Assembly: GCA_002269645.1 (NCBI GenBank)
Contig: NIVC01002233.1
Coordinates: forward strand, 17,306 to 81,305
Length of the DNA: 64,000 nucleotides
Source of the DNA: Macrostomum lignano
Lineage: Eukaryota
Reading direction: 5' to 3'
In this document: in pieces, positions 5,611-56,532 of the stretch
Layout of the letters: every line of letters starts with the position of its first letter
Numbering within the stretch: position 1 is the first letter of the stretch
The notes under the pieces: generated by a model
Databases searched by the model: none
Told to the model about the DNA's origin: nothing
What the model saw: only the letters and a program-made list of their open reading frames with translations
Program-made: the position numbers and the translations under genes

Positions 5611-6310
5611 GCTTCCTTAGCTTGCAGGAGGGGATTCACCTCTCTTATTTAATCACCCGATAGTATTAACAAGCAGCTAAGCTCTATGAATGTCCAAGGC
5701 ATTCCAGTTTAGTCTATGGTCAAGTAAACCTGAGAAAAACGGCTACTTCCGTTACTCGTGACTAAAATGCACGTAGCCGTGTAGTTAAAATTAAAAAGTC
5801 AACAAAGTTTATAGATAAAAACAAAAAGTTAAATAATCGGATGACTGCTACTGTGAGTAGAAAAATTAGGACAAGCTTTAAAGTTAAAAACGTCGCGCGT
5901 AGATATCAGGTTGTTGTACGCCGCAACCCCCTCCCTCAGCGAGACGAGAATTAGTGTGTGTACAGTTTGTTGGACTGTTATCACAACGTACATCCTCTCT
6001 TTAACCTCTCTCTCTCTCTCTCTCTCTCCTTTTTTAATGTACGCTCTGCAACCTCTCCTGTACAGTGAAGAGCTAAGGTCTTAGGAAATTAATTTGAAGC
6101 CAGTTAGTTGAACATTCTGCGTCGCCTGTTTTCTATACAGTAGTTGCCTCTTTCCTCCTAAATTAGGAAAACACACAGTTGAAAATTTCAAGGCCGCTAG
6201 TGTTAAAGATAGAACTATAAAATCACGAGATTATACAGTTTTAAAAAACAGGTTTAGTTAACAAGTTAATTTTCCTTAAGTCGTTTTCAAACCATACGAA
6301 GCTCAGGGCC

Positions 6311-7236
6311 ATGGACCTTGTACTCGACTTTGCTGATAATTGGCTATTGACGCCTTACGTTTATCCTTCTAGCATTGAGTCGACAAATCCCTACAGGCAA
6401 TTGTTCAGCCTGTTTGTCATCACTACAGCCGGCGGCTACTTTCTGTATCTGGCCACGGCCTGGCTTGGCTATGTACTTTTATTTGACAAGCGACTGTTGC
6501 AGCATCCGCTGATTCTGAAGGATCAGATAAGACGCGAGATTACCTATGCGTCTAAGTCCATACCTATTATGGGCGTGCTCACCACTGCTGTGTTCTTCTT
6601 CGAGGTGCGGGGCCACGCCAAGCTCTACGACTCGTACGGGGACACTCGACTGGGTGAGCCCTTGGTTAGCATAACTTCACTAGCTGCAACTATGCTCGTA
6701 ATGTACTATATTGGCGTCACCGATCTCCCTCATCAGGCTACATGACCCTGCCCATCACCGTGATCAGCTTCATCTTGTTCACGGACTGCCTGATCTATTG
6801 GATTCACCGGTTCCTGCACCACAAACTGGTGTACAAGCACATCCACAAGGGCCATCACATCTGGAAGGTGCCGACACCGTTCGCTAGCCACGCTTTTCAC
6901 CCGCTGGACGGATTTGTGCAGAGCCTGCCGTATCACGTCTTCCCGTTTTTGTTTCCGCTGCACAAGCTCACCTACTTGGGCTTGTTCGTGTTTGTCAACG
7001 TGTGGACAGTGTCAATTCACGACGGTTATTACCGGGTGCCAACTCTGCTCAAGCCTTTCATCAATGGTAGCGCGCACCACACCGATCACCACCTGTTCTA
7101 CAACTACAATTATGGCCAGTTCTTCACACTCTGGGATCGTCTGGGCAGCTCGTTTCGAGAGCCGTCCGCATTCACCGGTCAGGGACCGTTGCAGGCTGTT
7201 GTTGCTGGAAAACAATCGAACGGAAAAGACCACTAA
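6311..7236 (+). CDS. SC5D: Lathosterol oxidase / sterol C5-desaturase, 280 aa; exons 6311-6653, 6737-7236
   Basis: Three histidine boxes (HRFLHH, HKGHH, HHTDHH), [14 protein letters not shown] and [11 protein letters not shown] motifs. An 83-nt GTGAGC...CATCAG intron in phase 1 joins the two ORFs. Confidence 0.93.
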
Positions 7237-8616: not shown

Positions 8617-11362
8617 ATGGACCTGCAAACCTGGAAGAAGTTCGCCGTGCTGCAATGGGTGCTGACCTTCCTGCTGGTAGGTCCCGGCTGCGCAGCCATC
8701 ATGTTGATTCTGTTTCGCACCAGCTGGTGGTCCGCAGTCCTGCTCTACGGAGTCTGGTACTACTACGACCGGGACACGCCACGTCGGGGTGGTCGCCGAG
8801 TCAACTGGGTGCGCCGCTGGGGCCTCTGGCGTCGGATGGCCGAGTACTTCCCGGTGAAACTGCACCCTACCTGCGAACTGGATCCCAAGGAGAACTACGT
8901 GCTTGGCTACCATCCGCACGGCGTCCTGAGCACGGGCGCTTTTCTCAACTTCGCCACCGAAGCTACCGAGTTCAGTAGGAAATTTCCAGGAATAACTCCG
9001 TACCTGAGCGTGCTTGACGGCCATTTCGACTTCCCGTTGTACCGGGAGTACTTCATGTGCTCCGGTGAGCAATGAACTCTGTTCTGCTCTTCCCCTAATT
9101 TCATCTGTATCTGAAAAGCGCATCTTACTCTTTTCCAGTCTTTTTTTACATATCTACTTTCCTCCCTGCTTCCCATCTGCACCTTTTGCACCACGCATCC
9201 TCGGAACCAGTAAAAGTACAAAAGAATATTGTTGAGCAGCTGCAATGCGAAACTAATCGGAAAATAAAACACACATTGTACTTTAACCCCCCCCCCCATG
9301 CAGGCGTGATCTCCGTGCGCAAAGAGAGCCTGCAGAACGTTCTCCATCAGCGTCGCAAGACTGCCGGTGGTCAGTTGGTCTGCGTCATTCCGGGCGGAGC
9401 AGTGGAAGCTCTGGACTCGCATCCGGGAACCGTGTACAGGGTGCACCTGCGCAACAAGCTGGGCTTTGTGCGGCTGGCCATGCAGACTGGGTCAGGAGTT
9501 CGATTCTGCGCCTCTCACCTCCATCTCAGCCCGTCTGTCTCAGATTCTCTCCCTTCATCTCAGCCCGTCTGTCTCAGATTCTCCCCCTTCATCTCAGCCC
9601 GTCTGTCTAAGTTTCTCTCCCTTCATCTCAGCCTGTCTGCCTCAGATTCTCCCCCTTCATCTCAGCCCGTCTGTCTAAGTTTCTCTCCCTTCATCTCAGC
9701 CCGTCTGCCTCAGATTCTCCCCCTTCATCTCAGCCCGTCTGCCTCAGATTCTCTCCCTTCATCTCAGCCCGTCTGCCTCAGTTTCTCTCCCTTCATCTCA
9801 GCCCGTCTGCCTCAGATTCTCCCCCTTCATCTCAGCCCGTCTGCCTCAGTTTCTCTCCCTTCATCTCAGCCCGTCTGCCTCAGTTTCTCCCCCTTCATCT
9901 CAGCCCGTCTGCCTCAGATTCTCTCCCTTCATCTCAGCCCGTCTGCCTCAGTTTCTCTCCCTTCATCTCAGCCCGTCTGCCTCAGATTCTCCCCCTTCAT
10001 CTCAGCCCGTCTGCCTCAGTTTCTCTCCCTTCATCTCAGCCCGTCTGCCTCAGTTTCTCTCCCTTCATCTCAGCCCGTCTGTCTCAACTTCTCTCCCTTC
10101 ATCTCAGCCCGTCTGCCTCAGTTTCTCTCCCTTCATCTCAGCCCGTCTGCCTTAGATTCTCTCCCTTCATCTCAGCCCGTCTACCTCAGTTTCTCTCCCT
10201 TCATCTCAGCCCGTCTGTCTCACCTTTTCTCCTTTCATTTCAGCCTTTCTCACTCCATCTTTTTCTGTCTTCATCATTTTTAATTTACCACAAAAGACAT
10301 TTCAATAAGACAATTGATTGAAAATTAAACTCCCAACAAAACTGACTTCCAGATCCAGCCTGGTGCCGTGTTTTTCCTTCGGCGAAATCGACCTGTTCAA
10401 CCAGGTGAACAACCGAGCCGGCAGCCCGCTGCGGGCGGTGCAGAATTTCCTGGTGAAAATTTTCGGCTTCTCAATGCCAATCTTCAGTGGACACGGCTTG
10501 CTGCCATTCGCTAAGCCTATCAACACCGTTGGTGAGCGTTTGGGCGACTTAATCGCTACTTTATCTGATTTGAGGTTTAATTAATTAAATTAGTGAGAAT
10601 TTTATCTGTGGTATTACGCTACTTTTAGTAGTTACAATCTCTCCTCAGAGGACAATAAGCGAAAGCTTTCACATCATCGAAGTTTCAAATCGTAAAAAAA
10701 TAGTTCATCATCAACTTGAATCCCCATTATCCAGGTAATAAACTTCAGCTGAAGAGATTCCATTACTTAGGTGGTAATATTAAGTAAGAGAATTACTACG
10801 TGATTGATTTCGACAATGTGAAATTTCGTCAAATTTTAACAACAGAAAAGCAGGTGCGACCTTGGGAGTCGCCCGGCAGTTTCTATTAATAGCACCACAC
10901 ACAGTACGAGCAATCACGTGACATACTTTGGTCGCGCCGGTTGCCAGTACAAACGGCGAGGAGATTCTCATGGTCACTAGTCGGCCTTGGGTCAGACCCG
11001 CTTTTTGAGCTAAAAATAGACTGGCGACGCAAATGTACATACATACTCGTAGTCACGTGACTTAAAGTTTAATGCAGACAATTGTTTTTATTCCTCAGAA
11101 ATCTAGCTTTTACGTAACGCTTCCTATTTTTATTATTAGAAAACGTAAAAAATAATTCTAATTATATAGATACGAACTTAATTATCTCTTTTTCTTTTTT
11201 TACCTTGCAGTTGGGGCACCAATTAAGGTGGAGAAAAATTACGAACCAACTGATGAACAAGCTCGCGATCTGCTCAATCGCTACATAAGCGATTTGGAAT
11301 TGTTGTTCTGCGCCAATAAAGCAAAGTACATCGGGACCGATGCTCGACTCGAGATAGTGTGA
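8617..11362 (+). CDS. DGAT2/MOGAT-family acyltransferase, ~321 aa; exons 8617-9064, 9304-9490, 10353-10531, 11211-11362
   Basis: YHPHG motif, GGAVEAL, GFVRLAMQTG/SSLVPCFSFGE, PINTV/VGAPI. All junctions are GT-AG with matching phases (1, 2, 1). Confidence 0.92.
9503..10225. repeat. ~34-bp pyrimidine-rich minisatellite (CTCTCCCTTCATCTCAGCCCGTCTGCCTCAGATT) in acyltransferase intron 2
   Basis: About 20 tandem units. The array accounts for the spurious SSQPVCLSFSP extension in the ORF track. Confidence 0.95.
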
Positions 11363-11654: not shown

Positions 11655-13492
11655 ATGAGTGCTCAATTGAATGATGGAGTGTCTGATTGGATGCTAGGGT
11701 GAGTGCTCGATTAAATAATGGAGCGCTCAATTGAATGATAGAGTGCTCAATTGAATGATAGAGTGCTCAATTGCATGATAGAGTGCTCAATTGAATAACG
11801 GAGTGCTCAATTGCATAATGGAGTGCTCAATTGAATGATAGAGTGCTCAATTGAATGATAGGGTGCTCAATTGAGTAATGGAGTGCTCAATTGAATTATA
11901 GAGTGCTCAATTGCATAATGGAGTGCTCAATTGAATGATAGAGTGCTCAATTGAATGATAGAGTGCTCAATTGCATAATGGAGTGCTCAATTGAATTATA
12001 GAGTGCTCAATTGAATGATAGGGTGCTCAATTGAGTAATGGAGTGCTCAATTGAATTATAGAGTGCTCAATTGCATAATGGAGTGCTCAATTGCATAATG
12101 GAGTGCTCAATTGAATGATAGAGTGCTCAATTGAATGATAGAGTGCTCAATTGCATAATGGAGTGCTCAATTGAATGATAGAGTGCTCAATTGAATGATA
12201 GGGTGCTCAATTGAGTAATGGAGTGCTCAATTGAATTATAGAGTGCTCAATTGCATAATGGAGTGCTCAATTGAATGATAGAGTGCTCAATTGAATGATA
12301 GAGTGCTCAATTGCATAATGGAGTGCTCAATTGAATGATAGAGTGCTCAATTGAATGATAAGGTGCTCAATTGAGTAATGGAGTGCTCAATTGAATGATA
12401 GAGTGCTCAATTGCATAATGGAGTGCTCAATTGAATGATAGAGTGCTCAATTGAATGATAGAGTGCTCAATTGCATAATGGAGTGCTCAATTGAATGATA
12501 GAGTGCTCAATTGAATGATAGGGTGCTCAATTGAGTAATGGAGTGCTCAATTGAATGATAGAGTGCTCAATTGCATAATGGAGTGCTCAATTGAATGATA
12601 GGGTGCTCAATTGAATGATAGAGTGCTCAATTGAATGATAGGGTGCTCAATTGAGTAATGGAATTTTCAATTGAATGATAGGGTGCTCAATTGAGTAATG
12701 GAATGTTCAATTGAATGATAGGGTGCTCAATTGAGTAATGGAATGTTCAATTGAATGATAGAGTGCTCAATTGAATGATAGAGTGCTCAATTGAATGATA
12801 GGGTGCTCAATTGAGTAATGGAGTGCTCAATTGAATGATAGAGTGCTCAATTGAATGATAGGGTGCTCAATTGAGTAATGGAGTGCTCAATTGAATGATA
12901 GAGTGCTCAATTGAATGATAGAGTGCTCAATTGAATGATAGGGTGCTCAATTGAGTAATGGAGTGCTCAATTGAATGATAGAGTGCTCAATTGAATGATA
13001 GAGTGCTCAATTGAATGATAGGGTGCTCAATTGAGTAATGGAGTGCTCAATTGAATGATAGAGTGCTCAATTGAATGATAGAGTGCTCAATTGAATGATA
13101 GAGTGCTCAATTGAATGATAGGGTGCTCAATTGAGTAATGGAGTGCTCAATTGAATGATAGAGTGCTCAATTGAATGATAGGGTGCTCAATTGAGTAATG
13201 GAGTGCTCAATTGAATGATAGAGTGCTCAATTGAATGATAGAGTGCTCAATTGAATGATAGGGTGCTCAATTGAGTAATGGAGTGCTCAATTGAATGATA
13301 GAGTGCTCAATTGAATGATAGAGTGCTCAATTGCATAATGAAGTGCTCAATTGAATGATAGAGTGCTCAATTGAATGATAGGGTGCTCAATTGAGTAATG
13401 GAGTGCTCAATTGAATGATAGGGTGCTCAATTGAGTAATGGAGTGCTCAATTGAATGATAGGGTGCTCAATTGAGTAATGGAGTACTCAATC
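11655..13492. repeat. 20-bp minisatellite (GAGTGCTCAATTGAATGATA)n
   Basis: About 90 tandem units with a few recurring variants. Confidence 0.97.
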
Positions 13493-14382
13493 GGTGCAGA
13501 AAATTTAGTTTCGAAAAATGCTATCCTGATTGAAAAAGAACCTATATACTCTACTCGATAGTTAGGCAGCAAGTAGCATAAAAAGATAACATCTCACTTT
13601 CGTGATCGTTCTCTGAGAATCACGTCACTGCTTGATGCACTTTAAAAATCTTACAATATAGCTTTTAACGCTCGCAGTATCGCAATTTTCATGCATGGAC
13701 GAATTCAATTTGGTACAAAAGCCGTCCCTGATCTTATGTGGAAAATTTTAAGTACCTGTCTCGTTAATGTAATTTTCTAAAAAAAGCATTGAGTTGCTCA
13801 GCCAAGCCCCACCCAGACGCAAGCTGGCTCATATCTTTATTGCATTGTACCGCGCCACCAGACTTGATCAAGAAGCTTCTAAGGCCATTCATTCTACAGC
13901 GGTGCACACAGATACGAGTATGCTCCAAAGCCATGGTCTCATACAATATACACTCATAATTTATCACTCCCTGCCAATGTAAGGCTATAGCATCTATTAA
14001 TCATTTAGGGAATGGGAGACAGCACGAGTGCTATAAGAGATTGTGTGCAGGAAAATTTGTCAGACTTGTGCATTAGTAAGGCCAGGCGTGCTTGGTGCAC
14101 AAGTACTTGAACGAGTGCACTTACTCTGTGCACCCTAGCTGTACTTTTTGTCCAACTAAATCCTGACCAGCATTGCAGGCAAACTAAAGAGCTACAATGC
14201 TATCAGATTCAGTGCGCGGGAAAGTGCGCTTCTTTGCGGCCAAAAAAGAGAACGGCAATCAAAATATCCTGATTTCTCATGCACTTTTTCTGAGACACAG
14301 CACTATAACGCGTCATCTGTATTCGCTCCGCCAGCGCATGAAAGCGTGCTATAAGCTGCTAAACAAGCCTACGCAGTTGCAG

Positions 14383-33906: not shown

Positions 33907-35487
33907 CTACTTAGAAGACACCGGAGTATCTCTCGCTGGGGCGGACCCGGCAGTCAGCGGGCAGTACTGAATGAAACTGTGCAGTGTGCGATCAAAGCCC
34001 AGCGACCATTTGAACAGGCGGCAGCAGGCCTCCAGTTTCTGGTCAAACTCGAACGGATAATGATAATAGAGCGAATCCACCAGGTGCTGATGGTAGCGCA
34101 GGCCTAAACGATTGCAGGCGTCAATCATTCGGCTATCGGTGATGTCGCAGTCCCGAAGCGGCAGGTACAGCAGCTTGGCAGCGCAGAACAATGCGATGAG
34201 TTCCGGCCGCATGTCCGTGACTTCTTGCAGCAGGCTGATGTAGGTTTCGCATTCGACCAGAGGCGTGTAGTCAACCAGGTGGCTGCTGGTGCTGCGCACC
34301 TGCGTTTTATCGGGTGAGGGATAGATATTAACGATTGCAGGCTTAGGGGCGATTCTATAGGGTAGCTGATGGGCCGATTCTATAGGGTAGCTAATGGGCC
34401 GATTCTATAGGGTAGATAATGGGCCGATTCTATAGGGTAGATAATGGGCCGATTCTATAGGGTAGCTATGGGCCGATTCTATAGGGTAGATAATGGGCCG
34501 ATTCTATAGGGTAGCTATGGGCCGATTCTATAGGGTAGATAATGGGCCGATTCTATAGGGTAGCTATGGGCCGATTCTATAGGGTAGATAATGGGCCGAT
34601 TCTATAGGGTAGCTATGGGCCGATTCTATAGGGTAGATAATGGGCCGATTCTATAGGGTAGCTATGGGCCGATTCTATAGGGTAGATAATGGGCCGATTC
34701 TATAGGGTAGCTAATGGGCCGATTCTATAGGGTTGCTCATGGGCCGATTCTATAGGGTAGCTATTGGGGCGATTTTATAGTATAGGGTAGCTAATGGGCC
34801 GATTCTATAGCTAGATAAAAGAGGGGTTATATAGGGTAGATAATGGAGTAATTCTAGCAAATAGCAAATAGCTAGATTCTATAGTATAGGGTAGCTAATA
34901 GGGCGATTCTATAGCATAAAGTAGCAAATAGGGTCACTAGTTCTATAGCTAGGGTAGCTAACAGGCGATAGTTAAGGACCAATGTTGCTCACAAAAACTA
35001 CTTACCAGATCGATAAAGAGCTGAATGGGGTGGCAGCTGATCTTACTGCCCCGGATGGTGAAGTAGAACTGCCTATCATCCTGGCAGTAGCCAGCGCAGG
35101 ACAGCGGGAACAGCACAGAATGCAGGCGGCACCTGAGCAGAGCCAGAAAATGCGGTTTCTCCAGCTGGTCTACCTGACGCAGACCCGCTATAAACCTGGC
35201 AACCTGATGAACGAAGGCTTCTAGCATGGCTACGCCAGTGTCATTAGCCGTTTGAATATCGCACAGCATCGTATCCGCAACCAGTTTTCTCAGTTCGACA
35301 AAGAAGTCAACTAAAAGTACATTGGCATAGCGATGATCCTCCGCGCCAGAAGCTTCGTTACAATTCGGCTCAGTGAATGAAGACGGCGGCAGTTTCGGTT
35401 CAGGCGACTGCAGGCGATGCCAGAGTCGAAGCAGGTGCTCGCTTTGGTCCGAGTCTCTGGCTGCGTCAGGTAGACGGGCCGGCTGAA

Positions 35488-42372: not shown

Positions 42373-43675
42373 TTTTACTTTTTTTACATTTAGAAACACA
42401 TTTGGATATTCGGATTTGGAATTTTTTGTACATTCGGATTTGGTTTTGGAAACTTGCAAGAATCTACATTTGGTCCATCACTAATAGAATGCTTGAGAGA
42501 CTAGCTGATGATGCTAATGAAGAAGTTAGAACTGATGTAGATGCATGTGGTTGACAAGCTGAATAAATTTAGAGGCTTGGCAAGGCTGCACTGAGATGCA
42601 ATACTGATTGATGCACAGGGGTACACTGAATACACTAGCAATCAAAGAAAAAAACTAACATTCTAACAGAATTGTTGAATATCTTGATAGTCTGCAAGGC
42701 TGATGACTTGATATTGATTATTGTTGAAGAAAATATAGAACCAAAAGTTAGCTTGTGTTTCTGAATTTCATATGCTTGCATTTATTACATTGCTCCATTT
42801 CAGTGTTGCAAAAAATGTCAGGTAGAGAGAGGGAGAAGACCCACTCTTGGTGGTTCAATAGTCAGAAAAATGGCTTGGTATTCCTTATATTAATTCATAC
42901 AAGTCTGTTTTGCAGGCTTAGGACTATAGAACTTAGACTTGCATCCCATTTATTGGCTAGAAAATGTTGTTTTGTTTGCTAGCAAAAAGGAAGCAGACAA
43001 AATCATAGCATACAAATATGGCTAAAACATCAAATCTTTCTATTTATTACATCATTATTAGTACTATCTTTGCTTACATACATTAATTTCTAATTTACTA
43101 GCTATTCTTATGCTATTAATAGATTTGAAACCAATTATCAATAATATATTCTCTATCTTTTGAGATGTTTGCTTTGGTAGATAGGGCAATTGCTCATTTT
43201 GTCTCCTATTGTAGCCAAGGTCTGAATTGCACCAGGTGCCCCCCTTTCTTGCAGCAATGCAACAGTGACATATGTAGGATTTTCTATGGATTTTCCATAG
43301 TTAAAACAATAAAAGATCTTTTTAAGTGGGTTGCTTTTCTCTTTCTTTGTAAGCTTGCAGAACTGCAATTTAAAAATTTACATTACATGCAGAAAATATA
43401 ATATAATGAATAGTATGTAAACCTAGAAATTTAAGTAAATGTTCAAAAACTTTAAACTTTAAGTCTCAAACAACAACTACATTTTTTTGCAAGTTTGTAC
43501 ATTCACTGCAACATGCAATACTGCTCTGCTCTTCAACCCCACCATATGATACAACACTACCTGCCTTTCTTAAATTTGTGATCACAATGCAATACTGGAA
43601 AATATTGAATGTGTGGTGGACAGCTATTTATGATTTGTTAACTTATTCCAAAATAGGTCATTTGCTATACTGAGA

Positions 43676-43974
43676 CATACATGCGCAACAGTCAGCCAAG
43701 TCGGCCGATCTGGCTGACTGATTTGGCGACCAACCAAGGAAGTCGCAAAAATGCCCACTCAAAAAAACACCCAAGTAGTAGTACTAAGTAGCTGATGAGG
43801 CATTTTGGCTTAATAAGAGAGTCATAGTTACTCCTGCCGTTTACCTAAAGTTGCGTTAATTTTGCTTAACAGTTTTTTTTACATGCAAGTCACATTTTTG
43901 GCCAAAAACTACGTCGCATTTTTGTTAAAACTAAGTCACATGGCCGACCGAATTTTGGAGGTTGCGCATGTATG
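43676..43974. mobile_element. hAT-type MITE (14-bp TIR, 8-bp TSD) containing a 28S rRNA-like fragment
   Basis: TIRs CATACATGCGCAAC and GTTGCGCATGTATG. The TSD TACTGAGA is present on both sides (43668-43675 and 43975-43982). Internal 43794-43845 matches the reverse complement of 28S rRNA. Confidence 0.85.
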
Positions 43975-48965: not shown

Positions 48966-49078
48966 TTAAAATTATACACTGTCACGGTGAAATTATTTAT
49001 TTGTTTAATTCATTTGTCTAAACCTGTTTAAAAGACGATATCAACTATCAGTGAAGCAGTATTTTATGGCTTTTACAA

Positions 49079-49116
<38 letters not shown>

Positions 49117-49175
49117 GCAGAAACAGCAACAGCAACAACAACATCAACAACAACAACAGCAACAACAACAACAGC

Positions 49176-49206
<31 letters not shown>

Positions 49207-49208
49207 GC

Positions 49209-49242
<34 letters not shown>

Positions 49243-49307
49243 GCAACAACAACAACAACAACAGCAACAACAACAGCAACAACAGCAACAACAACAGCAA
49301 CAACAGC

Positions 49308-49341
<34 letters not shown>

Positions 49342-49416
49342 GCAACAACAACAACAACAACAGCAACAACAACAGCAACAACAGCAACAACAACAGCAAC
49401 AACAACAGCAACAACA
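49079..49416 (+). repeat. (CAA/CAG)n tract, ~110 units; possibly polyQ-coding remnant of the zinc-finger gene
   Basis: Interruptions are almost all CAA/CAG, plus one AAA and one CAT. Confidence 0.9.
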
Positions 49417-49785
49417 AAAATTCCTGCTAGCAAACTTCGGTTAGCAGATTTCGTCTAGCAGATTTCGGCTAGCAGATTTCGGCTAGCAGATTTCGGCTAG
49501 CAAACTTCGGCTAGCAGATTTCCTGCTAGCAAATTTCATAGACCCTAATTTATATTGGACGCCTCATTTTGTTTTAGTAAAAATTAATAATTATAATAAT
49601 TATTATTATTAATAATACAAATAGTAATAATAATAATAGATTACGCCTGCCCCAGGTGGGCCAGATGTGCAGCCGACAGCTCAGCCGCATCTGAAGGCTC
49701 TGAAGGCTGTTCAGTCCGAGGACTGGGGGGGGGGGGGTCGCCACACACAGCCTCAATTACCCCAGCTAATGCTGGCACCCATTTT
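49417..49785 (+). repeat. ~369-bp direct duplication of 48471-48836 (14-bp repeats, AT-rich segment, SINE 3' half)
   Basis: Near-identical, differing mainly in G-run length and a few bases. Confidence 0.93.
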
Positions 49786-49837
49786 GCAGCAGCTTGAAAC
49801 AGCAGCACAGCAGCAACAAAGTTGCAATGCAACAACA

Positions 49838-49915
49838 CCCACTCTATTGTCCAGTGGCCTCTTCGTGGCGAGTGGGAGCCGGCCCCTCTGGGGACGGAGA
49901 CTCGAACAACTGGAC
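49838..49915 (+). ncRNA. HDV-like self-cleaving ribozyme at the retrotransposon 5' end
   Basis: P1 CCCACTC/GAGTGGG; P2 GTCCAGT(G)/(CA)ACTGGAC; P3 GCC/GGC; L3 TCTTCGT; P1.1 CT/AG; P4 CCG-G-CCCC-TCT-GGGG-A-CGG; J4/2 CGAA with the catalytic C at 49903. Confidence 0.85.
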
Positions 49916-49985
49916 GAACTCGGAACACCTTCGTTGGAGAGGAGAGGCGGTGGAGGAAATACCAAACCGCGAGATAGATGAGCGT

Positions 49986-52900
49986 ATGGGATGGAGAGCG
50001 ACTGAAATAGTACCGATTGCCATGGACGTCGAAAGGAACCCCGGACCCTGTGGTCGTTGCAGTAAAGTGATAACGTCGGGCCACAGGCCTATCAAATGCC
50101 AAGAATGCAACAAGGACTTTCATGGCGCGTGCACTGGACTCACCCGATCAGCGCAGGAGAGAGCCAGACAGCAACCCCACTGGCGTTGTTCAAACTGCCA
50201 GCTAGACGGCCAATGGAAAGAAGAAAGCGATGCCGAGGAGCGCGCCCGCTGGGAAAGAGACGCTGAAGCCATTCGAAACGGCGACTCATGCTCTGCTAAA
50301 GGATGCAAGACTAAGCTGAAAATCACTAAGGTCATCGTGCGCTGTAAGGAGTGCCACGGGCTGTTCCACAACAAATGTTCGGGCGCTAGCAGAGCATCCA
50401 TCGAGGGCGAAGTTAGGCGCGGAAAGTGGTCCTGCACGGACTGTCTGAACCGTATCCGGCTTACCTCGGAGGAGGCCTCCGCCACGGATGATCAGAACAC
50501 CCGCACGGGCGAAGCGAGTGCCGGATGGGCTGTTGATCGCAAGAGTACTCTACGCATACTGCAGTGGAATGCGGATGGCGTTAACAACAAAAGGGCGGAA
50601 CTGGAAGAGTTTCTACACAATCTAGACGTCGACGTTGCTGTCCTCCAGGAGTCGAAACTTTCGGAGGCGAGTGAGACCCCCCGTTTTAGAGGGTACACGA
50701 CGGTCCGTAAAGACCGCAGAGAGATCCGCCGCAGTGAGAGAGCTAGAGGGGGCGGCCTCATTACTCTGATTAAGCACAATATCCCGTTTAAACGTCTAAC
50801 TGCTTGGAAAGGCAATATCACCGAAGGGCTCAGGACGATAGTTGACATCAGCAAAAAAGAGCGCATTGTGATCACCAACGTCTACCGCCCCCCGATTAGG
50901 ACGGTGGAAGGGGAAGATGACAGAGACAGAGACAGCGTGTGGGACTGGATGAGCCCCGATCGCCGGGAAATTATCCTGGGTGACTTCAATTTGCACTCGG
51001 CAGAATGGGGTGCCACGGCCGAGCAAAGCCATCAAGATCAGCGCGAGGCGCAGGAGCTCCTTGATTGGTCCACGGAGTTCCAGTACCAGATCCTTAACGA
51101 CGGAACGGCCACCCGCACGGACTGGCGCACTGGCGCGCAAAGTTCCCCGGATGTTTCGCTGGCTGCACCTGACATCTGTATGAGATGCAAATGGTCCTGC
51201 TCACGAGGACTCAGCTCCGACCACCACCCGATCATTATCGACATCACCGCAGAAAGGGAAGTCAGAAAAATCAGAAAACGGTTGGCGTGGTCCTGGAAAA
51301 AGGCCGACTGGACCGAGTACCAGCGACGCTGTGAAGAGGCGGTGACTGCGGTCCCTAGGGGGCCCATAGCCCAAGAAACGAGAGCCCTCAGCGAAGCTAT
51401 GGTCCAGGCCGCTGTTAAGTGTATCCCCAAGAAAAGGGTGGGAAACCGCTATATGCCATTCTGGGATGAACAACTTGCGGAGGCCCAGGCATTACGTGAT
51501 AAGGAAAGTAGAGAAAACTCTGATAGTAGAGCGCGGTGGCACAGCGCTAACGAAACCCTTAGCAATCTCATCAAAGAGAAACGTTCCGCCTTCTGGAGAG
51601 AGCACGTGAGTAAGCTGCAAGAAGGAGATGACGGCAAAAGCACATGGAGGCTGATCAAGACCCTGCACGCGGTTAAGGAGGACTGTGTCCCTAACGAGAT
51701 CGTGGTCAACGAAGGACGAGAAGCTAGAACCGACAAGGAAAAAGCGGCGGTCTTCATTAATTTGTATGCATCAAACAGCAAAGTCCAGCTGGGTAAAGAA
51801 GAGCGGGCGTTAAGAGCTGAGGTCGCCAAGAAACTAAGGACGTACAACGAGGGCGCTGAATTCAGCACCCCGTTCACCCGCGAAGAACTCAAAGACGCAC
51901 TTGACCAGATGGCTGCAGACAAAAAAGGTGGCGTCGACGGTATTGAGGTACGGTTCCTTAAGAACTTGCCCGAACAGTGCTTAGATCGCTGGCTCGACAT
52001 CTTCAACCGCAGTTGGGCGGAGCACTCGTGCCCCGGGATCTGGAAGAAAGCCGAGATCATACCACTGCTCAAAGCCGGCAAAGATCCGAAGCAGCGTGAG
52101 TCGTATCGCCCTATCAGCCTCACCCCGGTGTGTGCGAAGCTGATGGAGCGGATGGTCACTAATCGGCTGTACTTTTGGATGGAAGACAACAAGATCATCA
52201 AAAGTTGGCAGGCGGGCTTCCAAAGAGGCCGCAGCACTGAAGAGCAAGTGATCCGGTTAGTGCAATCCATCCAGGATGGCTGGGAGGAGCGCCGCCCGCT
52301 CAAGACCGTTGCCGTCACCCTGGACTGCTCCAAAGCATACGAGAGAGTGTGGCGGGTCAAATTGATGGATAGAATGCTGGAAGAAAAAGTCCCAGCGCAC
52401 CTCGTTAAGTGGTTCGCCAGCTTCCTGGAGGACCGCAAAGGCAGAGTGCGCGTGGGCGATGAGACCAGCAAATTCAGACGCTTCCAGGAGGGACTGCCGC
52501 AAGGAGCGGTGAGCTCCCCAGCGTTATTCCTCCTTTACGCTAACGGCTGGAACGGCCTCACCGAGCAGGGCGTGGAATATGGCGGCTTCGCCGACGACCT
52601 CGCCATCTGGGCCTCTGGTACCGTGTACTCGGAGGTCAGAGATACCATCCAGAGAGCGCTGATTAAGATCGAGAGGTGGGCCAAAGTGCTGAAGATAGAG
52701 CTAAATCCAACCAAATGCGAATGTTGTATTTTTAGTAGATCTCCTAAGGACAAGTCTGCTGTCACGGGACTCACGATCGCCGGCCGCACTATCGCCACTG
52801 TGAGGAAACTTAAATACCTGGGTATCACCATCGATGGCGGCTTAACGTTCGCGGCTCATACGGAGGCCGTGCTAAACAAAATGAAACGCAGAGTTAGAGC

Positions 52901-54245
52901 TATCCGTGTCCTGGCTAATACCAGCTGGGGCTGGAGGACCGAGGAACTCCTGTTGATCTACAAAAGTATTGTTGAGAGTTGTATCTGGTACTGCGCCCCA
53001 GCGTGGCTCCCCTGGCTGTCCAGCACTAGCTTTGAAAAACTCGAACGTGCTCAGAGAGAATGTCTCCGTCTAGCTGCGGGACTGGTGCGTTCCACCCCCA
53101 TTGAAGCGGTGTACGTGGAGACTAATATCGAGCCGATCCGTTATCAAGCGCGCAAAAGGGCGATGCTGGCCTGGGAAAAGGCCACCAGAGCCCCAGAGGG
53201 AGACCCGCTCAGGGAGTGTAGTGAAAGAACCGGAAACCGCAGACTTCAGGCGAACAAAGGGTGGAGGGATCAGGCCAGAGAGGAATGCCTGAGGAGGTCG
53301 ACCCACCCCAGAGAGGGCTTCACCAGAAAGAGACACCCGCCGTGGAGACGGCTACATATGGACGGCGTCGTGATCGCTACGGAGCTTATTCGCGGAGGAA
53401 AGAAGGGTGACAGCAACCTCGCCACAGAGACGATCGACACCATTAACGCCTGGGGCAAATTCGATTTGTCAATCTACACGGATGGGTCTGTTGGAGAAGG
53501 GCAGCGTAAGGGTGGTGCAGCTTGTGTCGTGTACTTTGACACGGAGAGACGCGTCAAGAAAGCGGCGGCCGGGGAGTGGTGCAGCTCCCTGGTTGCGGAG
53601 GAGCGAGCCCTGGAGCTGGCACTGGATACCATTGCGGAGGCCAAGCCGCGAAATGCCATCATCCTGACGGACTGTAAATCGGCCCTCCTCAAGCTCAGCA
53701 GCGAGAAAGCTACCCAGGATACCACGTCGTACCGCCTGATCAGTAGACTCCGTGAGATTAGCCAAGTTACCAGAGTGGTGCTGCAGTGGGTACCCGGTCA
53801 TGTTGGTGTCGCGGGCAACGAGGATGTCGACCAGGAGGCTAAGGAAGCAGCGGCTCTACCGCAGGACGACGTCCCCGTCATGTGGAACTGTGTAAAGGCG
53901 GCCATCAGGAAGGAGCCGGCGCCCCCGCCCTCTGATGAGCGTCTCCGTAGGGTCTACAAGCACAAAATTAACAAATGCGCTGAAAATCGTAGCACGGAGA
54001 CCACACTCGCCCAACTCAGATGTGGTCAATGCAAGAAGACGGCCTACTGGCGACAAAAAATCGGTGCTGAGGCAAAGGCGAGTTGTCAGGACTGCGGTGA
54101 GGAAGAGGACAAGGACCACTGGGTGTGGTGCGACAGGTGGCATAAGGAGAGGGCGCGTTTTGGTATTCAAGGTCTGGAGGATCTGGGAGATGAAGCGAAG
54201 GTGCTAGGGTTCCTGAAGTGCACGCACCCTGAGTGGGTGCAATGA
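49986..54245 (+). CDS. Retrotransposon polyprotein: 2A motif, two PHD fingers, AP endonuclease, reverse transcriptase, RNase H, C-terminal zinc knuckle (the frame is open from 49794; the true start is uncertain)
   Basis: DVERNPGP; two Cys/His PHD-type clusters; APE (LQWNADG, LQES, VYRPP, GDFN, SDHHPI); RT (YRPISL, QAGFQRGRST, GLPQGAVSSP, FADD, KYLG); RNase H (YTDGS, AEERA, TDC, QWVPGHVGVAGNE). Confidence 0.93.
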   Translation: MGWRATEIVPIAMDVERNPGPCGRCSKVITSGHRPIKCQECNKDFHGACTGLTRSAQERARQQPHWRCSNCQLDGQWKEESDAEERARWERDAEAIRNGDSCSAKGCKTKLKITKVIVRCKECHGLFHNKCSGASRASIEGEVRRGKWSCTDCLNRIRLTSEEASATDDQNTRTGEASAGWAVDRKSTLRILQWNADGVNNKRAELEEFLHNLDVDVAVLQESKLSEASETPRFRGYTTVRKDRREIRRSERARGGGLITLIKHNIPFKRLTAWKGNITEGLRTIVDISKKERIVITNVYRPPIRTVEGEDDRDRDSVWDWMSPDRREIILGDFNLHSAEWGATAEQSHQDQREAQELLDWSTEFQYQILNDGTATRTDWRTGAQSSPDVSLAAPDICMRCKWSCSRGLSSDHHPIIIDITAEREVRKIRKRLAWSWKKADWTEYQRRCEEAVTAVPRGPIAQETRALSEAMVQAAVKCIPKKRVGNRYMPFWDEQLAEAQALRDKESRENSDSRARWHSANETLSNLIKEKRSAFWREHVSKLQEGDDGKSTWRLIKTLHAVKEDCVPNEIVVNEGREARTDKEKAAVFINLYASNSKVQLGKEERALRAEVAKKLRTYNEGAEFSTPFTREELKDALDQMAADKKGGVDGIEVRFLKNLPEQCLDRWLDIFNRSWAEHSCPGIWKKAEIIPLLKAGKDPKQRESYRPISLTPVCAKLMERMVTNRLYFWMEDNKIIKSWQAGFQRGRSTEEQVIRLVQSIQDGWEERRPLKTVAVTLDCSKAYERVWRVKLMDRMLEEKVPAHLVKWFASFLEDRKGRVRVGDETSKFRRFQEGLPQGAVSSPALFLLYANGWNGLTEQGVEYGGFADDLAIWASGTVYSEVRDTIQRALIKIERWAKVLKIELNPTKCECCIFSRSPKDKSAVTGLTIAGRTIATVRKLKYLGITIDGGLTFAAHTEAVLNKMKRRVRAIRVLANTSWGWRTEELLLIYKSIVESCIWYCAPAWLPWLSSTSFEKLERAQRECLRLAAGLVRSTPIEAVYVETNIEPIRYQARKRAMLAWEKATRAPEGDPLRECSERTGNRRLQANKGWRDQAREECLRRSTHPREGFTRKRHPPWRRLHMDGVVIATELIRGGKKGDSNLATETIDTINAWGKFDLSIYTDGSVGEGQRKGGAACVVYFDTERRVKKAAAGEWCSSLVAEERALELALDTIAEAKPRNAIILTDCKSALLKLSSEKATQDTTSYRLISRLREISQVTRVVLQWVPGHVGVAGNEDVDQEAKEAAALPQDDVPVMWNCVKAAIRKEPAPPPSDERLRRVYKHKINKCAENRSTETTLAQLRCGQCKKTAYWRQKIGAEAKASCQDCGEEEDKDHWVWCDRWHKERARFGIQGLEDLGDEAKVLGFLKCTHPEWVQ

Positions 54246-55672
54246 GGGAACCCGCCCAGCCGAAGACACACACACACACACAACAACAACAACAACAACA
54301 ACAACAACAGCACCAACACCAACAGTCGCAGCAGCAGCCTCAGCCTCCAGTCCAGGCGGCTGTCCCCAGTAGCGCAGCGGATTCGCCGCTAGACCTGACA
54401 ATTCCAAAGCTGCCGTCGCGTCGCTAGCCAAGGCGAACGGACCGGCGACTTTGTCGGCGTCCGTCTGCGGCCCGGTGCCACTGGATTTGTCCTACAATTC
54501 TGGCAGGTCGACTGGCGCATCGAGGATCGATCGGTCGCGTAAGCAGCGTCGCTCTTTGCCGCCCTCGATGCTGACGGCTCCACAGCAGCAGCGACAGCAG
54601 GGGGTGCCGATACTCAGCCCGCTGCTCTTCCCCAGCCCGACTCTGCCAACAACGACGTCAACGTCTGCAGCAGCTCCGGCCTCGTCCAGCTCAGTCGGCG
54701 TCCATCATCAGCTGGCCGATCATCTGCCCGTGTGGACGCCTCGCCGGAGCCTCCAGGCGTCCCGGGCTGCTCAGATTCGCAGCATTCGGCGCCAGGAGCC
54801 GTCGACGATCCTAGCGGCGGCCGCGGCGGCCGCCAGCCGGTGACCACCTGCCACCAGTGCGGCCGCGGCTTCGTCTGCCAGGGCGACATGAACGCCCACT
54901 TCGAGCTGGAGCACCTGGCCGCGCTAATGGGCGAATTCGACCATGGCAAGTCTTGGAAATCCTCCGCCGTGGAGAACAAGGAGCTCAACGTTGAGGCGAC
55001 CATGGTGCGGCTGGAGAACGGCGACACGATCGGGTTCAAGTGCCCCGAGTGCGACTACTTTGCCAAGTGGCCCACCGAGCTGCAGAAGCACATCATGGTG
55101 CACTCCAGCGCCAGGCCGCACGTGTGCGTCGTCTGCGGCTGCACCTACAAGTGGAAGTGGGACCTCGGCAGACACTTCGACCGATCGCACGAGTCGGCCG
55201 CAATGCCCAATCCGTATAAGAAGAACTCAGCCAGGCCGTCCAGCGGCGGCGGCGGCGGCTACCCGAGCAGCGCATCAGCGGCTGCGACCTCCTCGACAGG
55301 CCGGTCAACTCCAAGGGCGCCGCGTCAAAGTGGCGGCAGCGGCAGTAGCCGTCTGGCTTCTCCATCGGCTGGCGGCTCAACGACGGCCGAGCTGCTGGCG
55401 TACTATTCCACTCCAGCCCGGTCCGCTGCCATGGCTGCCGCTGCTGCGTCTGCCGCTGCCGCCGCCGCCGCAGCTGCCGTCGGTGAGGCCGCTGTGTCCG
55501 CCGCGGCGTCGCCGTCTGAGCCCGAGAATTGTCGCCTCCGCCTCCGCGGCTGGTGCTGAAGTCCGAGGATGAAGACGGCGTCAATGATGACTCACAGCTG
55601 CAGCAGCAGCTCGCCTGTCCTATCTGTGGCGCACAGGTGAGTACCACTCATTTGGGGGGGGCGGGGTGAAAT

Positions 55673-56062: not shown

Positions 56063-56532
56063 ATTAGCTCGAATATACAATTTATTACGTTATCAAATTT
56101 GCAGACTCGCTGGCCGGACGAGCTGAAGACTCACGTTGTCGGGCACAGCGAGTTCCGGCCCTACCGCTGCAGCGGCTGCCCCTTCGCCAGTCGCGAGCGC
56201 TCCGAAGTTGTCGCTCACATCGAAGCCTCCTGCTGCGAACCCGCTGGCGCCGGGCACCACCCAGCCGACTCGACGGTGCTGTGCGAGCCGCCGCCGCTCC
56301 TCGTCGGGGTGTTCGCCGACGGCGCCGAGGTGGCCGACTACGCAGAGAGGGCCGCTAGGCGTCAGCGGTTGCAGCAGTTCGATGGCGATGACGAAGAGGA
56401 CGAAGCAGCAACGGCCGGAGAGGCAGAAGAGGCGAATGACGACTCGAGAGATGAAGATGCCAAGGTGAGACTTGGTGAGCCTGTGCACTGTTGCTTCCCT
56501 TTATAGCCTTATATCTTCATAAGTGGTTTGAT

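What the first reader, a model, noticed from the sequence alone, without database searches (positions are those of the whole stretch)
49838..49915. Complete HDV-like ribozyme defining the retrotransposon 5' end
Seen: all elements of the nested double pseudoknot are present in order within 78 nt: P1 (7 bp), P2 (7 bp plus 1), P3, an L3 loop TCTTCGT with conserved U20/G25, P4 and J4/2 CGAA. P1.1 carries a compensatory change (T22-A38 in place of C22-G38), and position +1 is a C-G pair. Established: trypanosome L1Tc/ingi elements start with a 77-nt HDV-like ribozyme with C at +1, and R2 elements also use one. Inference: the ribozyme cuts this element out of host-driven transcripts exactly at 49837/49838, where the flanking CAACAACA ends.
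Basis: partly seen in the sequence, partly recalled or inferred. Interest (0 to 1): 0.82.

Follow-up and report, generated by a model that had tools for sequence, protein, structure and literature searches.

The report
HDV-like ribozyme heading a flatworm LINE
The first 78 bases of an intact, recently active jumping gene (a LINE retrotransposon) in the flatworm Macrostomum lignano fold into a hepatitis-delta-type self-cutting RNA, which most likely trims the element's RNA out of host gene transcripts; this is a new example of a known trick.

Summary
Window 49838-49915 (+) contains every element of an HDV-like nested double pseudoknot, in the right order. It is the exact 5' end of a 4.47-kb non-LTR retrotransposon of Macrostomum lignano. 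The element has one ORF: leader, 2A (DVERNPGP), PHD, APE, RT and RNase H, followed by an (AC)n(AAC)n tail.

The helices alone are only about a 0.1-per-window event by chance, and no Rfam family reaches its threshold. The case rests on three other results:
- A covariance model built only from homologous elements in other organisms finds one hit in the 64 kb, at exactly 49838-49915.
- Across six instances from five lineages, 96% of base-pair cells pair and 22 of 27 pairs show compensatory changes. All seven P2 pseudoknot pairs are among them.
- A second M. lignano copy is 100% identical over 4444 nt, has unrelated flanks, and begins at the same CCCACTC next to a target-site duplication.

Both copies lie in sense orientation in (CAA/CAG)n tracts. 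At least one is inside a host coding exon and in frame.

Cleavage itself is untested. The closest known case is L1TcRz plus 2A of trypanosome L1Tc/ingi elements. Verdict: a new member of a known kind, of moderate interest.

The parts
49830..49837 (+). Upstream flank CAACAACA: (CAR)n target sequence and probable target-site duplication, not part of the element
   Evidence: In the second copy (L088) the corresponding flank is CAACAGCAACAGCA, and it is repeated after the 3' tail.
49838..49915 (+). HDV-like ribozyme (nested double pseudoknot). Predicted cleavage is 5' of C49838.
49838..49844 (+). P1 5' strand CCCACUC. It pairs with 49870-49876 (GAGUGGG).
   Evidence: Six of seven P1 pairs show changes on both sides among homologs.
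49849..49855 (+). P2 5' strand GUCCAGU. It pairs with 49909-49915 (ACUGGAC), and U49848-G49916 can extend the helix.
   Evidence: All seven P2 pairs covary and 100% of cells are paired.
49857..49869 (+). P3 (GCC/GGC) closing L3 UCUUCGU. L3 U49860 and G49865 correspond to HDV U20 and G25. C49861 and U49862 pair with G49878 and A49877 to form P1.1.
   Evidence: The L3 U, C and G columns are invariant in six sequences. P1.1 pair counts are.
49879..49897 (+). P4 hairpin (CCGGCCCC UCU GGGGACGG, with one G-A mismatch)
   Evidence: Seven of eight P4 pairs covary.
49898..49908 (+). J4/2 AGACUCGAACA. The CGAA motif is invariant, and the candidate catalytic cytosine is C49903.
   Evidence: C86, G87, A88 and A89 are invariant columns.
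49839..50024 (+). Leader reading frame, open from the cleavage site through the ribozyme to the 2A. It needs no AUG.
   Evidence: The same frame openness is seen in 6 instances, in different phases relative to the ribozyme.
50025..50048 (+). 2A-type ribosome-skipping motif DVERNPGP
   Evidence: The motif definition is from PMC3708506.
50049..50198 (+). PHD-type zinc finger. A second Cys/His-rich finger follows.
   Evidence: Pfam PF00628, E = 1.5e-4, just below the gathering score.
50559..51224 (+). APE-type endonuclease domain
   Evidence: Pfam PF03372 and PF14529.
52086..52832 (+). Reverse transcriptase domain
   Evidence: Pfam PF00078, E = 2.8e-34.
53466..53852 (+). RNase H domain
   Evidence: Pfam PF00075, E = 2.6e-14.
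54243..54245 (+). Stop codon of the single long ORF
54246..54309 (+). Short 3' UTR with a CCGCCCA motif, then (AC)8 at 54266-54281 and (AAC)9A at 54282-54309. The last repeats may be target-derived or the target-site duplication.
   Evidence: The L088 copy has (AC)n followed directly by the duplication. The CCGCCC motif also occurs in the 3' UTRs of L001 and L003.

Best explanation
Window 49838-54309 is a full-length, intact, recently transposed non-LTR (LINE) retrotransposon of Macrostomum lignano. It has a single ORF: leader, 2A, PHD, APE endonuclease, RT and RNase H.

Its first 78 nt fold as an HDV-like self-cleaving ribozyme. The element shows no sign of a promoter of its own. It inserts in sense orientation into (CAA/CAG)n tracts, including polyglutamine-coding exons, so it is transcribed as part of host pre-mRNAs.

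Proposed mechanism:
- The ribozyme folds co-transcriptionally.
- C49903 in J4/2 acts as the general acid/base.
- The RNA is cut immediately 5' of C49838.
- This releases an element RNA with a 5'-OH that still carries the ribozyme, so every full-length daughter copy inherits it.

The reading frame stays open from +1 through the ribozyme to the 2A. The element's protein can therefore be made in two ways. One is from uncleaved host-element fusion mRNA, with 2A skipping off the host/leader part. The other is AUG-independent initiation on the cleaved RNA.

Shown here: the fold, its conservation and covariation, the coincidence of the DNA 5' end with the predicted cut site, the domain content, and the insertion context. 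Inferred: catalysis, host-driven transcription, and the translation route.
For: Structure. All helices, L3 and J4/2 are in the sequence at the stated coordinates. Rfam RF02682 (an HDV-type model) aligns P1, P3, L3, P4 and J4/2 starting exactly at 49838.

Independent model. Model R1 was built only from the ribozymes of L001, L003 (two copies) and L008. It finds one hit in the window on both strands, at 49838-49915 (23.6 bits, E about 1e-4).

Covariation. In the six-sequence, five-lineage alignment A6:
- 96% of cells are paired, against 42-52% when partners are slid.
- 22 of 27 pairs have changes on both sides.
- P2 covaries at 7 of 7 pairs, P1 at 6 of 7 and P4 at 7 of 8.
- The L3 U, C and G and the J4/2 CGAA are invariant.

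The 5' boundary:
- The second genomic copy, L088 (NIVC01000221.1), is 100% identical over 4444 nt with unrelated flanks.
- It begins at CCCACTC after CAGCAACAGCA, which is repeated after its (AC)n tail as a target-site duplication.
- A more distant relative exists as two copies, L005 and L006. These also lose homology exactly at the +1 of an HDV-like fold.

Element identity:
- APE, RT and RNase H are found by Pfam.
- A 2A motif lies downstream of the ribozyme in all relatives.
- The 2A frame is open from +1 in 6 instances, but in different phases across the ribozyme. The RNA is therefore the conserved object, not a peptide.

Host context:
- L088 sits in frame inside a COMPASS-Shg1 gene exon.
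- The window copy lies upstream of a same-strand C2H2 zinc-finger ORF.

Precedent. L1TcRz is 77 nt, sits at +1 of L1Tc, starts CCC and has a one-base-pair P1.1. HDV-like ribozymes release R2, RTE and baggins elements from co-transcripts. HDV-like ribozymes need a J1/2 spacer, and 3-7 nt restores activity. The spacer here is 3-4 nt.
Against: - There is no biochemical or RNA-end evidence.
- No Rfam family reaches its gathering score in the window. Rfam does not detect the homologous ribozymes at all.
- The helices alone occur by chance about 0.1 times per window.
- The covariation alignment was made by hand to fit the structure, and it has only six sequences.
- R1's E-values are rough. R1 gave one evident false positive at 17.8 bits (L088:16786-16918, minus strand).
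- Position +1 is C-G, not the canonical G-U wobble.
- J4/2 has 5 nt (AGACU) between P4 and the catalytic C, where relatives have 1-2 nt.
- The nested minimum-free-energy fold prefers an alternative GAGU/ACUC pairing that sequesters the P1 3' strand and the catalytic C. Its energy is no better than shuffled sequence (z = -0.01).
- The DNA boundary is ambiguous by 2 nt, because CA precedes +1 in both copies.
- Some relatives have no detectable ribozyme (L002, L009, L012, Diplonema and an ENA eukaryote).
Confidence: 0.8

Rival explanations
1. The conserved 5' structure is real but does not define the 5' end by self-cleavage. It would act mainly as something else: an internal promoter at the DNA level (as Pr77 does in L1Tc), an IRES-like translation element, or a binding site for the element's protein. 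The uniform 5' end would then come from precise transcription initiation.
For: In L1Tc the same 77 nt are both an internal promoter and a ribozyme. HDV-like ribozymes of R2 and L1Tc are proposed to act as IRESes and as protein-binding sites. The ORF is open from +1 with no need for an AUG. The long J4/2 and the alternative fold in the M. lignano copy could lower cleavage.
Against: The invariant positions are exactly the HDV catalytic core: the L3 U, C and G and the J4/2 CGAA. Covariation maintains both pseudoknots, P2 and P1.1, which a promoter would not need. Both M. lignano copies sit in sense orientation inside host transcription units, where a promoter is unnecessary. These roles do not exclude cleavage.
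Confidence: 0.12
2. The match is a chance resemblance. A GC-rich 5' UTR happens to be drawable as an HDV-like fold.
For: The topology-only descriptor gives 2 hits per 1.07 Mb in reversed-sequence controls, and looser versions give about as many null hits as real ones. Rfam scores are sub-threshold. The minimum-free-energy z-score is about 0.
Against: A model built from other organisms' elements picks out this site alone in 128 kb of searched sequence. The same architecture recurs at the same place, upstream of the 2A, in five lineages, with 22 of 27 pairs covarying. The element's DNA 5' end coincides with the predicted cleavage site in two independent insertions.
Confidence: 0.03
3. Conservation reflects a coding constraint on an N-terminal leader peptide that is translated through this region, not an RNA structure.
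For: The 2A reading frame is open through the ribozyme in six instances.
Against: The frame crosses the ribozyme in all three phases among the elements. It differs even between the two near-identical L003 ribozymes. The encoded peptides are unrelated. The substitutions are paired compensatory changes across helices.
Confidence: 0.02

Closest known systems
L1TcRz / Pr77 of Trypanosoma cruzi L1Tc (L1Tc/ingi clade non-LTR retrotransposons)
   Same: - An HDV-like ribozyme of about 77-78 nt occupies the very first nucleotides of the element, with cleavage 5' of +1.
- The element starts with CCC, so +1 is C.
- There is a single ORF with APE, RT and RNase H and no ORF1.
- A 2A-like motif lies at the N-terminus, downstream of the ribozyme.
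- The ribozyme releases the element from host co-transcripts.
- Copies form tandem arrays, as seen here in L001, L003, L004 and L089.
   Different: - I found no detectable sequence similarity. I did not have the L1Tc sequence for a direct alignment, and no Rfam family links the two.
- P1.1 here is 2 bp (C-G and U-A), against a single pair in L1TcRz.
- PHD fingers lie between the 2A and APE.
- The host is a metazoan flatworm.
- The element has an (AC)n/(AAC)n or (CAA)n tail and inserts into (CAR)n tracts.
- Promoter activity is unknown.
R2 element HDV-like ribozyme (Drosophila and other animals)
   Same: - The 5'-terminal ribozyme cuts the element out of a host co-transcript.
- The element has no promoter of its own and is site-specific.
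- The ORF is open at the 5' end, with proposed cap-independent initiation.
- In some species P1 is formed with upstream target sequence. This compares with L089, where the P1 5' strand lies in the (AGC)n repeat.
   Different: - R2 has a restriction-like endonuclease, no APE or RNase H, and no 2A.
- It targets 28S rDNA.
- Its ribozyme is about 184 nt with a large J1/2 insertion.
HDV-like ribozymes of RTE and baggins LINEs and other drz-type ribozymes (Webb 2009; Ruminski 2011, as summarised in PMC6765202)
   Same: These are promoter-less LINEs sitting in introns or host transcripts, and the ribozyme marks the 5' end.
   Different: They belong to different LINE clades and carry no 2A. The primary paper (PMC3308841) is not held in the library, so I could not compare sequences.
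Rfam RF02682 (HDV ribozyme from Faecalibacterium prausnitzii), and the genomic HDV and CPEB3 ribozymes
   Same: The core is the same: a 7-bp P1, a 3-bp P3 closing a 7-8 nt L3 (CCUCUUCGUGG here, CCUCUaCGUGG in the model), a P4 hairpin and a J4/2 of C-N-A-A type.
   Different: The score is 23.4 bits against a gathering score of 44. Position +1 is C-G rather than a G-U wobble. The biological context differs (bacterial, viral or intronic).
2A-bearing single-ORF non-LTR retrotransposons of metazoans (Odon et al. 2013, PMC3708506)
   Same: The N-terminal D(V/I)ExNPGP motif is present, there is no ORF1, and in some elements a PHD domain lies between the 2A and APE.
   Different: That study does not mention ribozymes (0 occurrences of the word). 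Most of its clades (CR1, L2, Rex1, Crack) lack RNase H, and only Ingi has it.

Membership tests
HDV-like self-cleaving ribozymes | Nested double-pseudoknot topology, in the order P1 - J1/2 - P2 - P3 - L3 - P3' - P1' - P1.1 - P4 - J4/2 - P2' | tested here: met
   All elements are present in order at 49838-49915. The definition is from PMC4908430. The topology is maintained in five lineages, with 96% of cells paired.
HDV-like self-cleaving ribozymes | Cytosine in J4/2 (the HDV C75 equivalent), in a C-N-A-A context just before the P2 3' strand | tested here: met
   C49903 lies in CGAA. The CGAA columns are invariant in 6 of 6 sequences.
HDV-like self-cleaving ribozymes | An L3 of 7-8 nt with the conserved U (HDV U20) and G (HDV G25), and two L3 residues forming P1.1 with the two nucleotides 3' of P1 | tested here: met
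   L3 is UCUUCGU. The U and G columns are invariant. P1.1 here is C49861-G49878 plus U49862-A49877. The inner pair is kept as C-G or U-A in 6 of 6 sequences and the outer pair in 3 of 6. One- or two-base-pair P1.1 helices are known.
HDV-like self-cleaving ribozymes | G-U wobble at the cleavage site (the first pair of P1) | tested here: not met
   Position +1 is C49838 paired with G49876. This feature is not universal: L1TcRz is active and starts with C. The distant relative L005/L006 does have G-U at +1.
HDV-like self-cleaving ribozymes | A J1/2 spacer long enough to allow the core to form (no activity with 0 nt; activity recovered with 3-7 nt) | tested here: met
   J1/2 here is UAU(U), 3-4 nt. 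The requirement is from PMC4908430.
HDV-like self-cleaving ribozymes | Mg2+-dependent self-scission 5' of the first P1 nucleotide, giving 5'-OH and 2',3'-cyclic phosphate ends | not testable with these tools
   Only indirect evidence is available. The DNA 5' ends of two independent insertions coincide with the predicted site, to within 2 nt.
HDV-like self-cleaving ribozymes | A match to a curated Rfam HDV-type family at its gathering score | tested here: not met
   There are no gathering-level hits. The best hit is RF02682 at 23.4 bits against 44. The homologs are not detected. Rfam's HDV-type families are narrow, so this lowers family assignment, not the structural claim.
Ribozyme-terminated non-LTR retrotransposons (R2 / L1Tc type 5' processing) | The ribozyme's +1 is the first nucleotide of full-length genomic copies, with variable upstream flanks | tested here: met
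   The window and L088 copies are 100% identical from 49838 onward, their flanks are unrelated, and a target-site duplication abuts +1. The L005/L006 pair behaves the same way.
Ingi (L1Tc/ingi) clade of non-LTR retrotransposons | A single ORF with APE, RT and RNase H, no ORF1, and an N-terminal 2A | tested here: met
   Pfam domains, the 2A motif, and the clade description.
Ingi (L1Tc/ingi) clade of non-LTR retrotransposons | Placement of the RT domain within the Ingi clade by phylogeny (RTclass1-type analysis) | not tested
   No reference LINE RT set was available. The nearest named hit is only a Diplonema 'X-element'-like protein at 26% identity. Clade assignment therefore remains a lead.
2A / StopGo recoding peptides | A D(V/I)ExNPGP motif with a suitable upstream context | tested here: inconclusive
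   DVERNPGP is present. However, the upstream context here is PIAM, not the L-L-x-x-G-D seen in all relatives. Activity cannot be tested with these tools.

The most novel reading that the evidence does not exclude
This is a LINE lineage that specialises in (CAA/CAG)n tracts, including polyglutamine-coding exons. It inserts in sense orientation and in phase, so that the host's promoter, start codon and reading frame run straight into the element.

It would then free itself twice. At the RNA level, the HDV-like ribozyme produces the transposition template. At the protein level, 2A skipping releases the enzyme from the host-leader fusion.

The ribozyme-plus-2A module would be homologous to that of trypanosomatid L1Tc/ingi. 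That implies an ancient 5' module shared by protist and metazoan Ingi-type elements. It also implies that polyQ tracts in host genes are recurrent landing pads, and possibly partly products, of such elements.
Probability: 0.3. Interest if true: 0.65.

Novelty: new member of a known kind. Interest (0 to 1): 0.45.

Why it matters
- It adds a flatworm, and a set of uncultured relatives, to the organisms whose LINEs use an HDV-like ribozyme for 5' processing. It shows that the ribozyme-plus-2A pairing, known from trypanosome L1Tc/ingi, also occurs in a metazoan.
- The M. lignano element is intact and has two 100% identical copies. It is therefore a tractable, probably active model in a laboratory flatworm.
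- Its insertions into polyQ-coding (CAR)n exons create host-element fusion gene models such as PAA87688.1. Annotators should recognise these.
- Current Rfam models miss this ribozyme group. The alignment here could seed a new family.

Tried and rejected
- Rfam gathering scan of the window: nothing.
- Rfam permissive scans of the homolog ribozymes and of distant relatives: no HDV-type hits.
- Nested minimum-free-energy folding: uninformative for a pseudoknot (z = -0.01). It shows a competing GAGU/ACUC helix.
- MAFFT alignment of the ribozymes put the 3' halves out of register. I therefore used a hand-registered, N-padded alignment, which biases pair counts toward the structure.
- Loose home-made descriptors were non-specific: about 400 hits per strand, then 50 real against 52 null.
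- Other copies inside the window: none.
- Related loci in viral contigs and in bacterial/archaeal genome contigs: none.
- A second protein search with a profile added no close relatives.
- Models R1 and R2 found no further ribozymes in about 90 loci.
- L002, L009 and L012 have a 2A but no recognisable ribozyme.
- L007 has P2, P3, L3 (UUCACGU) and P4 but no convincing P1 5' strand.
- The Diplonema and ENA distant relatives have no ribozyme.
- The R1 hit at L088:16786-16918 (minus strand) was rejected as a false positive: its L3 would be about 33 nt and it has no P2.
- For L003 I chose the register starting at CAGGTCC rather than one base upstream, because the -1 base differs between the two copies. 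The cut site there is uncertain by 1 nt.
- The Ruminski 2011 paper could not be read.

Full report
**What is at the coordinates**

I read window 49838-49915 directly. It contains, in order:
- P1: CCCACUC / GAGUGGG, 7 Watson-Crick pairs (49838-44 with 49870-76).
- J1/2: UAUU.
- P2: GUCCAGU / ACUGGAC, 7 bp (49849-55 with 49909-15), extendable by the U49848-G49916 wobble.
- P3: GCC / GGC, closing L3 UCUUCGU.
- P1.1: C49861-G49878 and U49862-A49877.
- P4: a hairpin at 49879-97 with 7 bp and one G-A mismatch.
- J4/2: AGACUCGAACA, with the CGAA motif and the candidate catalytic C at 49903.

This is the nested double-pseudoknot order that defines HDV-like ribozymes, in which the cleavage site is the first nucleotide of P1 (PMC4908430).

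**Is it more than chance?**

On its own, only weakly.
- Rfam gives no gathering-level hit anywhere in the window.
- In a 351-nt search, the HDV-type model RF02682 aligns from model position 1 at exactly 49838. It scores only 23.4 bits against a gathering score of 44, with E = 0.024.
- Nested folding is uninformative (z = -0.01). It shows a competing GAGU/ACUC helix.
- My loose descriptors were non-specific.
- A strict topology-only descriptor found three sites in 1.07 Mb, all true members. It also found two in reversed-sequence controls. The helices alone would therefore turn up roughly 0.1 times per 64-kb window.

The case rests on context and comparison.

**The surrounding element**

An ORF runs from the ribozyme to 54245. 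It encodes:
- a 2A motif, DVERNPGP, at 50025-50048;
- a PHD-type finger;
- an APE endonuclease;
- a reverse transcriptase;
- RNase H (Pfam).

A roughly 20-nt 3' UTR follows, then (AC)8(AAC)9A, ending at 54309.

The protein is 100% identical to the retrotransposon part of Macrostomum lignano PAA87688.1. The window is therefore from this flatworm.

**A second genomic copy**

PAA87688.1 is encoded at a different locus, L088 (NIVC01000221.1).
- The two loci share only the element. Window 49838-54281 and L088 10965 onward are 100% identical over 4444 nt, and the flanks are unrelated.
- In L088 the element begins ...CAGCAACAGCA|CCCACTC. After its (AC)n tail, the sequence CAGCAACAGCA recurs. This is a target-site duplication abutting the predicted +1.
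- The only caveat is that both flanks end in CA, so the DNA evidence fixes the boundary to within 2 nt.

Two identical intact copies at different sites also indicate very recent transposition.

**Relatives in other organisms**

Protein searches and contig retrieval gave related elements in metagenome contigs at about 31-46% protein identity. Each has a 2A upstream of PHD/APE. HDV-like folds sit about 100-170 nt upstream of the 2A in:
- L001 (31-99);
- L003, two tandem elements (9075-9149 and 13869-13940);
- L008 (342-428);
- L089 (983-1046).

Their P1, P2 and P4 sequences differ from the window's, but they pair.

Covariance model tests:
- Model R1 was built only from the L001, L003 and L008 ribozymes. 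It finds a single hit in the whole window on both strands, at 49838-49915 (23.6 bits, E about 1e-4).
- R1's E-values are rough. It also gave one evident false positive in L088, with an L3 of about 33 nt and no P2.
- That false positive disappears with model R2, built from six sequences. R2 recovers only the seven known sites in 535 kb.

Pair counts on the six-sequence alignment:
- 96.0% of cells are paired, against 42-52% when the 3' partners are slid.
- 22 of 27 pairs have changes on both sides: P2 7 of 7, P1 6 of 7, P4 7 of 8.
- The L3 U, C and G and the J4/2 CGAA are invariant.

Caveat: MAFFT mis-registered the 3' halves. The alignment was therefore hand-registered to the structure and has few sequences, so the counts lean toward the structure.

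A more distant relative exists as two 98.9%-identical copies with unrelated flanks, L005 and L006. Their homology starts at CA|GCCUCCU. This is the +1 of another HDV-like fold with G-U at +1, an 8-bp P2 and a two-hairpin P4.

Several relatives show no ribozyme: L002, L009, L012, Diplonema and an ENA eukaryote. L007 has one without a convincing P1.

**Not a peptide constraint**

The 2A frame is open from +1 through the ribozyme in six instances, over about 190-256 nt. It crosses the ribozyme in different phases, even between the two L003 copies, and the encoded peptides are unrelated. This has two consequences. The RNA fold is the conserved object. The openness itself looks selected, which makes sense only if ribosomes arrive from upstream of, or within, the ribozyme. 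That in turn explains the presence of a 2A.

**Insertion context**

Eight of nine 5' junctions examined follow (CAA/CAG)n. In the tandem metagenome cases, this repeat is the 3' tail of an upstream copy.

In M. lignano both copies lie in the same orientation as host coding sequence:
- L088 is inside the polyQ stretch of a COMPASS-Shg1-domain gene, in frame. The public annotation therefore fuses host and element into one 1623-aa protein.
- The window copy sits in a Q-codon-rich stretch upstream of a same-strand C2H2 zinc-finger ORF. Whether that stretch is an exon is not established.

**Mechanism (inferred)**

1. The element is transcribed from the host promoter.
2. The ribozyme cleaves co-transcriptionally 5' of C49838. 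This gives a 5'-OH RNA that retains the ribozyme.
3. This RNA is the template for target-primed reverse transcription into (CAR)n sites.
4. The protein is made either from uncleaved fusion mRNA, with 2A skipping, or by cap- and AUG-independent initiation. The second route has been proposed for R2 and L1Tc.

**Comparison with known systems**

- The closest is L1TcRz/Pr77 of T. cruzi L1Tc. It is 77 nt, sits at +1 of the element, starts CCC, has a single-pair P1.1 and cleaves co-transcriptionally. Its ORF has APE, RT and RNase H and carries a 2A.
- R2, RTE and baggins elements use HDV-like ribozymes in the same way.
- The 2A-bearing metazoan LINE study does not mention ribozymes.
- A full-text search for Macrostomum plus ribozyme found nothing relevant.
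- In the flatworm Schistosoma mansoni, non-LTR elements were linked to twister ribozymes, not HDV-like ones (PMC8501958 abstract).

This is therefore a new member of a known kind. Ingi-clade membership is plausible from the domain order plus the 2A, but I did not test it phylogenetically.

**Verdict**

- Catalysis is untested.
- My confidence that this is a functional 5'-processing HDV-like ribozyme is about 0.8.
- Interest is moderate (0.45). The more interesting open angle is the sense, in-frame targeting of polyQ-coding repeats combined with the two release routes: the ribozyme for the RNA and 2A for the protein.

Noticed in passing
L088:10001-15372 (NCBI PAA87688.1, BOX15_Mlig033504g5): The public gene model is a chimera. 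A host COMPASS-Shg1-domain N-terminus (154 aa) is read in frame through the polyQ tract, the ribozyme and the 2A into the whole LINE ORF. UniProt A0A1I8J2C8 (1636 aa) is in the same 90% cluster.
   Followed up: partly
window 54732-55559 and 56099-56506 (+): ORFs with C2H2 zinc fingers (Pfam zf-H2C2_5, E = 1.8e-11) lie just downstream of the element on the same strand. Together with the Q-codon-rich flanks (49790-49837 and 54310-54430), this suggests the element sits inside a Q-rich zinc-finger gene. Exon structure is not established.
   Followed up: partly
window 49041-49458: A long imperfect trinucleotide microsatellite (ACC/ACN-type; it reads as poly-Thr, poly-Val or poly-Leu in different frames) lies about 400 nt upstream of the element. 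An AT-rich (ATT/ATA)n stretch follows at about 49590-49640.
   Followed up: no
window 11780-12640 and 34400-34800 (+): Two tandem-repeat arrays. One is built around TCAATTGA-containing units. The other has a unit of about 49 bp (…TCTATAGGGTAGCTATGGGCCGAT…). Both produce spurious hits with pseudoknot descriptors.
   Followed up: no
window 43675-43974; L088:2250-2545 and 6119-6416: A roughly 300-bp dispersed repeat (about 91% identity) is present once in the window and twice in L088, in opposite orientations about 3.6 kb apart. It may be the terminal repeats of another mobile element.
   Followed up: no
L004 (NCBI GCA_038533115.1, JBCAZM010000112.1): A contig filed in a 'Pseudomonadota bacterium' MAG is a eukaryotic LINE of this family, at 46% protein identity. 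It is a 5'-truncated copy directly after another copy's (CAA)n tail. This looks like eukaryotic contamination of the MAG.
   Followed up: partly
L005:111-210 and L006:134-233: A more divergent relative (31% protein identity) has an HDV-like fold with a canonical G-U at +1, an 8-bp P2, L3 UUCAAGG, a two-hairpin P4 domain and no CGAA. No 2A was found. The two copies lose homology exactly at its +1.
   Followed up: partly
L007:91-148: A partial HDV-like core is present: P2 GGGAGC/GCUCCC, P3 CCCC/GGGG, L3 UUCACGU (identical to the CPEB3 L3 as I recall it) and a P4 hairpin, all upstream of a 2A. No convincing P1 5' strand lies within the contig.
   Followed up: partly
L089:940-1046: In this relative the P1 5' strand (GCAGCAC) lies within the (AAC)7(AGC)5 repeat that forms the upstream copy's tail. 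The ribozyme may therefore use repeat or target sequence for P1, as some R2 ribozymes use 28S sequence.
   Followed up: partly
P0008 (UniProt A0A1I8I854, M. lignano): A second, diverged M. lignano family member (43% identity) has a canonical LLLRAGDIELNPGP 2A. Further along the same gene model a Q9-H-LLHRLW... stretch looks like another polyQ-to-element junction. No DNA was available to check for a ribozyme.
   Followed up: no
L003:4098-7280 (-) and L007:4250-5221 (+): Unrelated mobile-element ORFs lie next to the family members: a different APE/RT LINE in L003 and an rve integrase ORF in L007.
   Followed up: no
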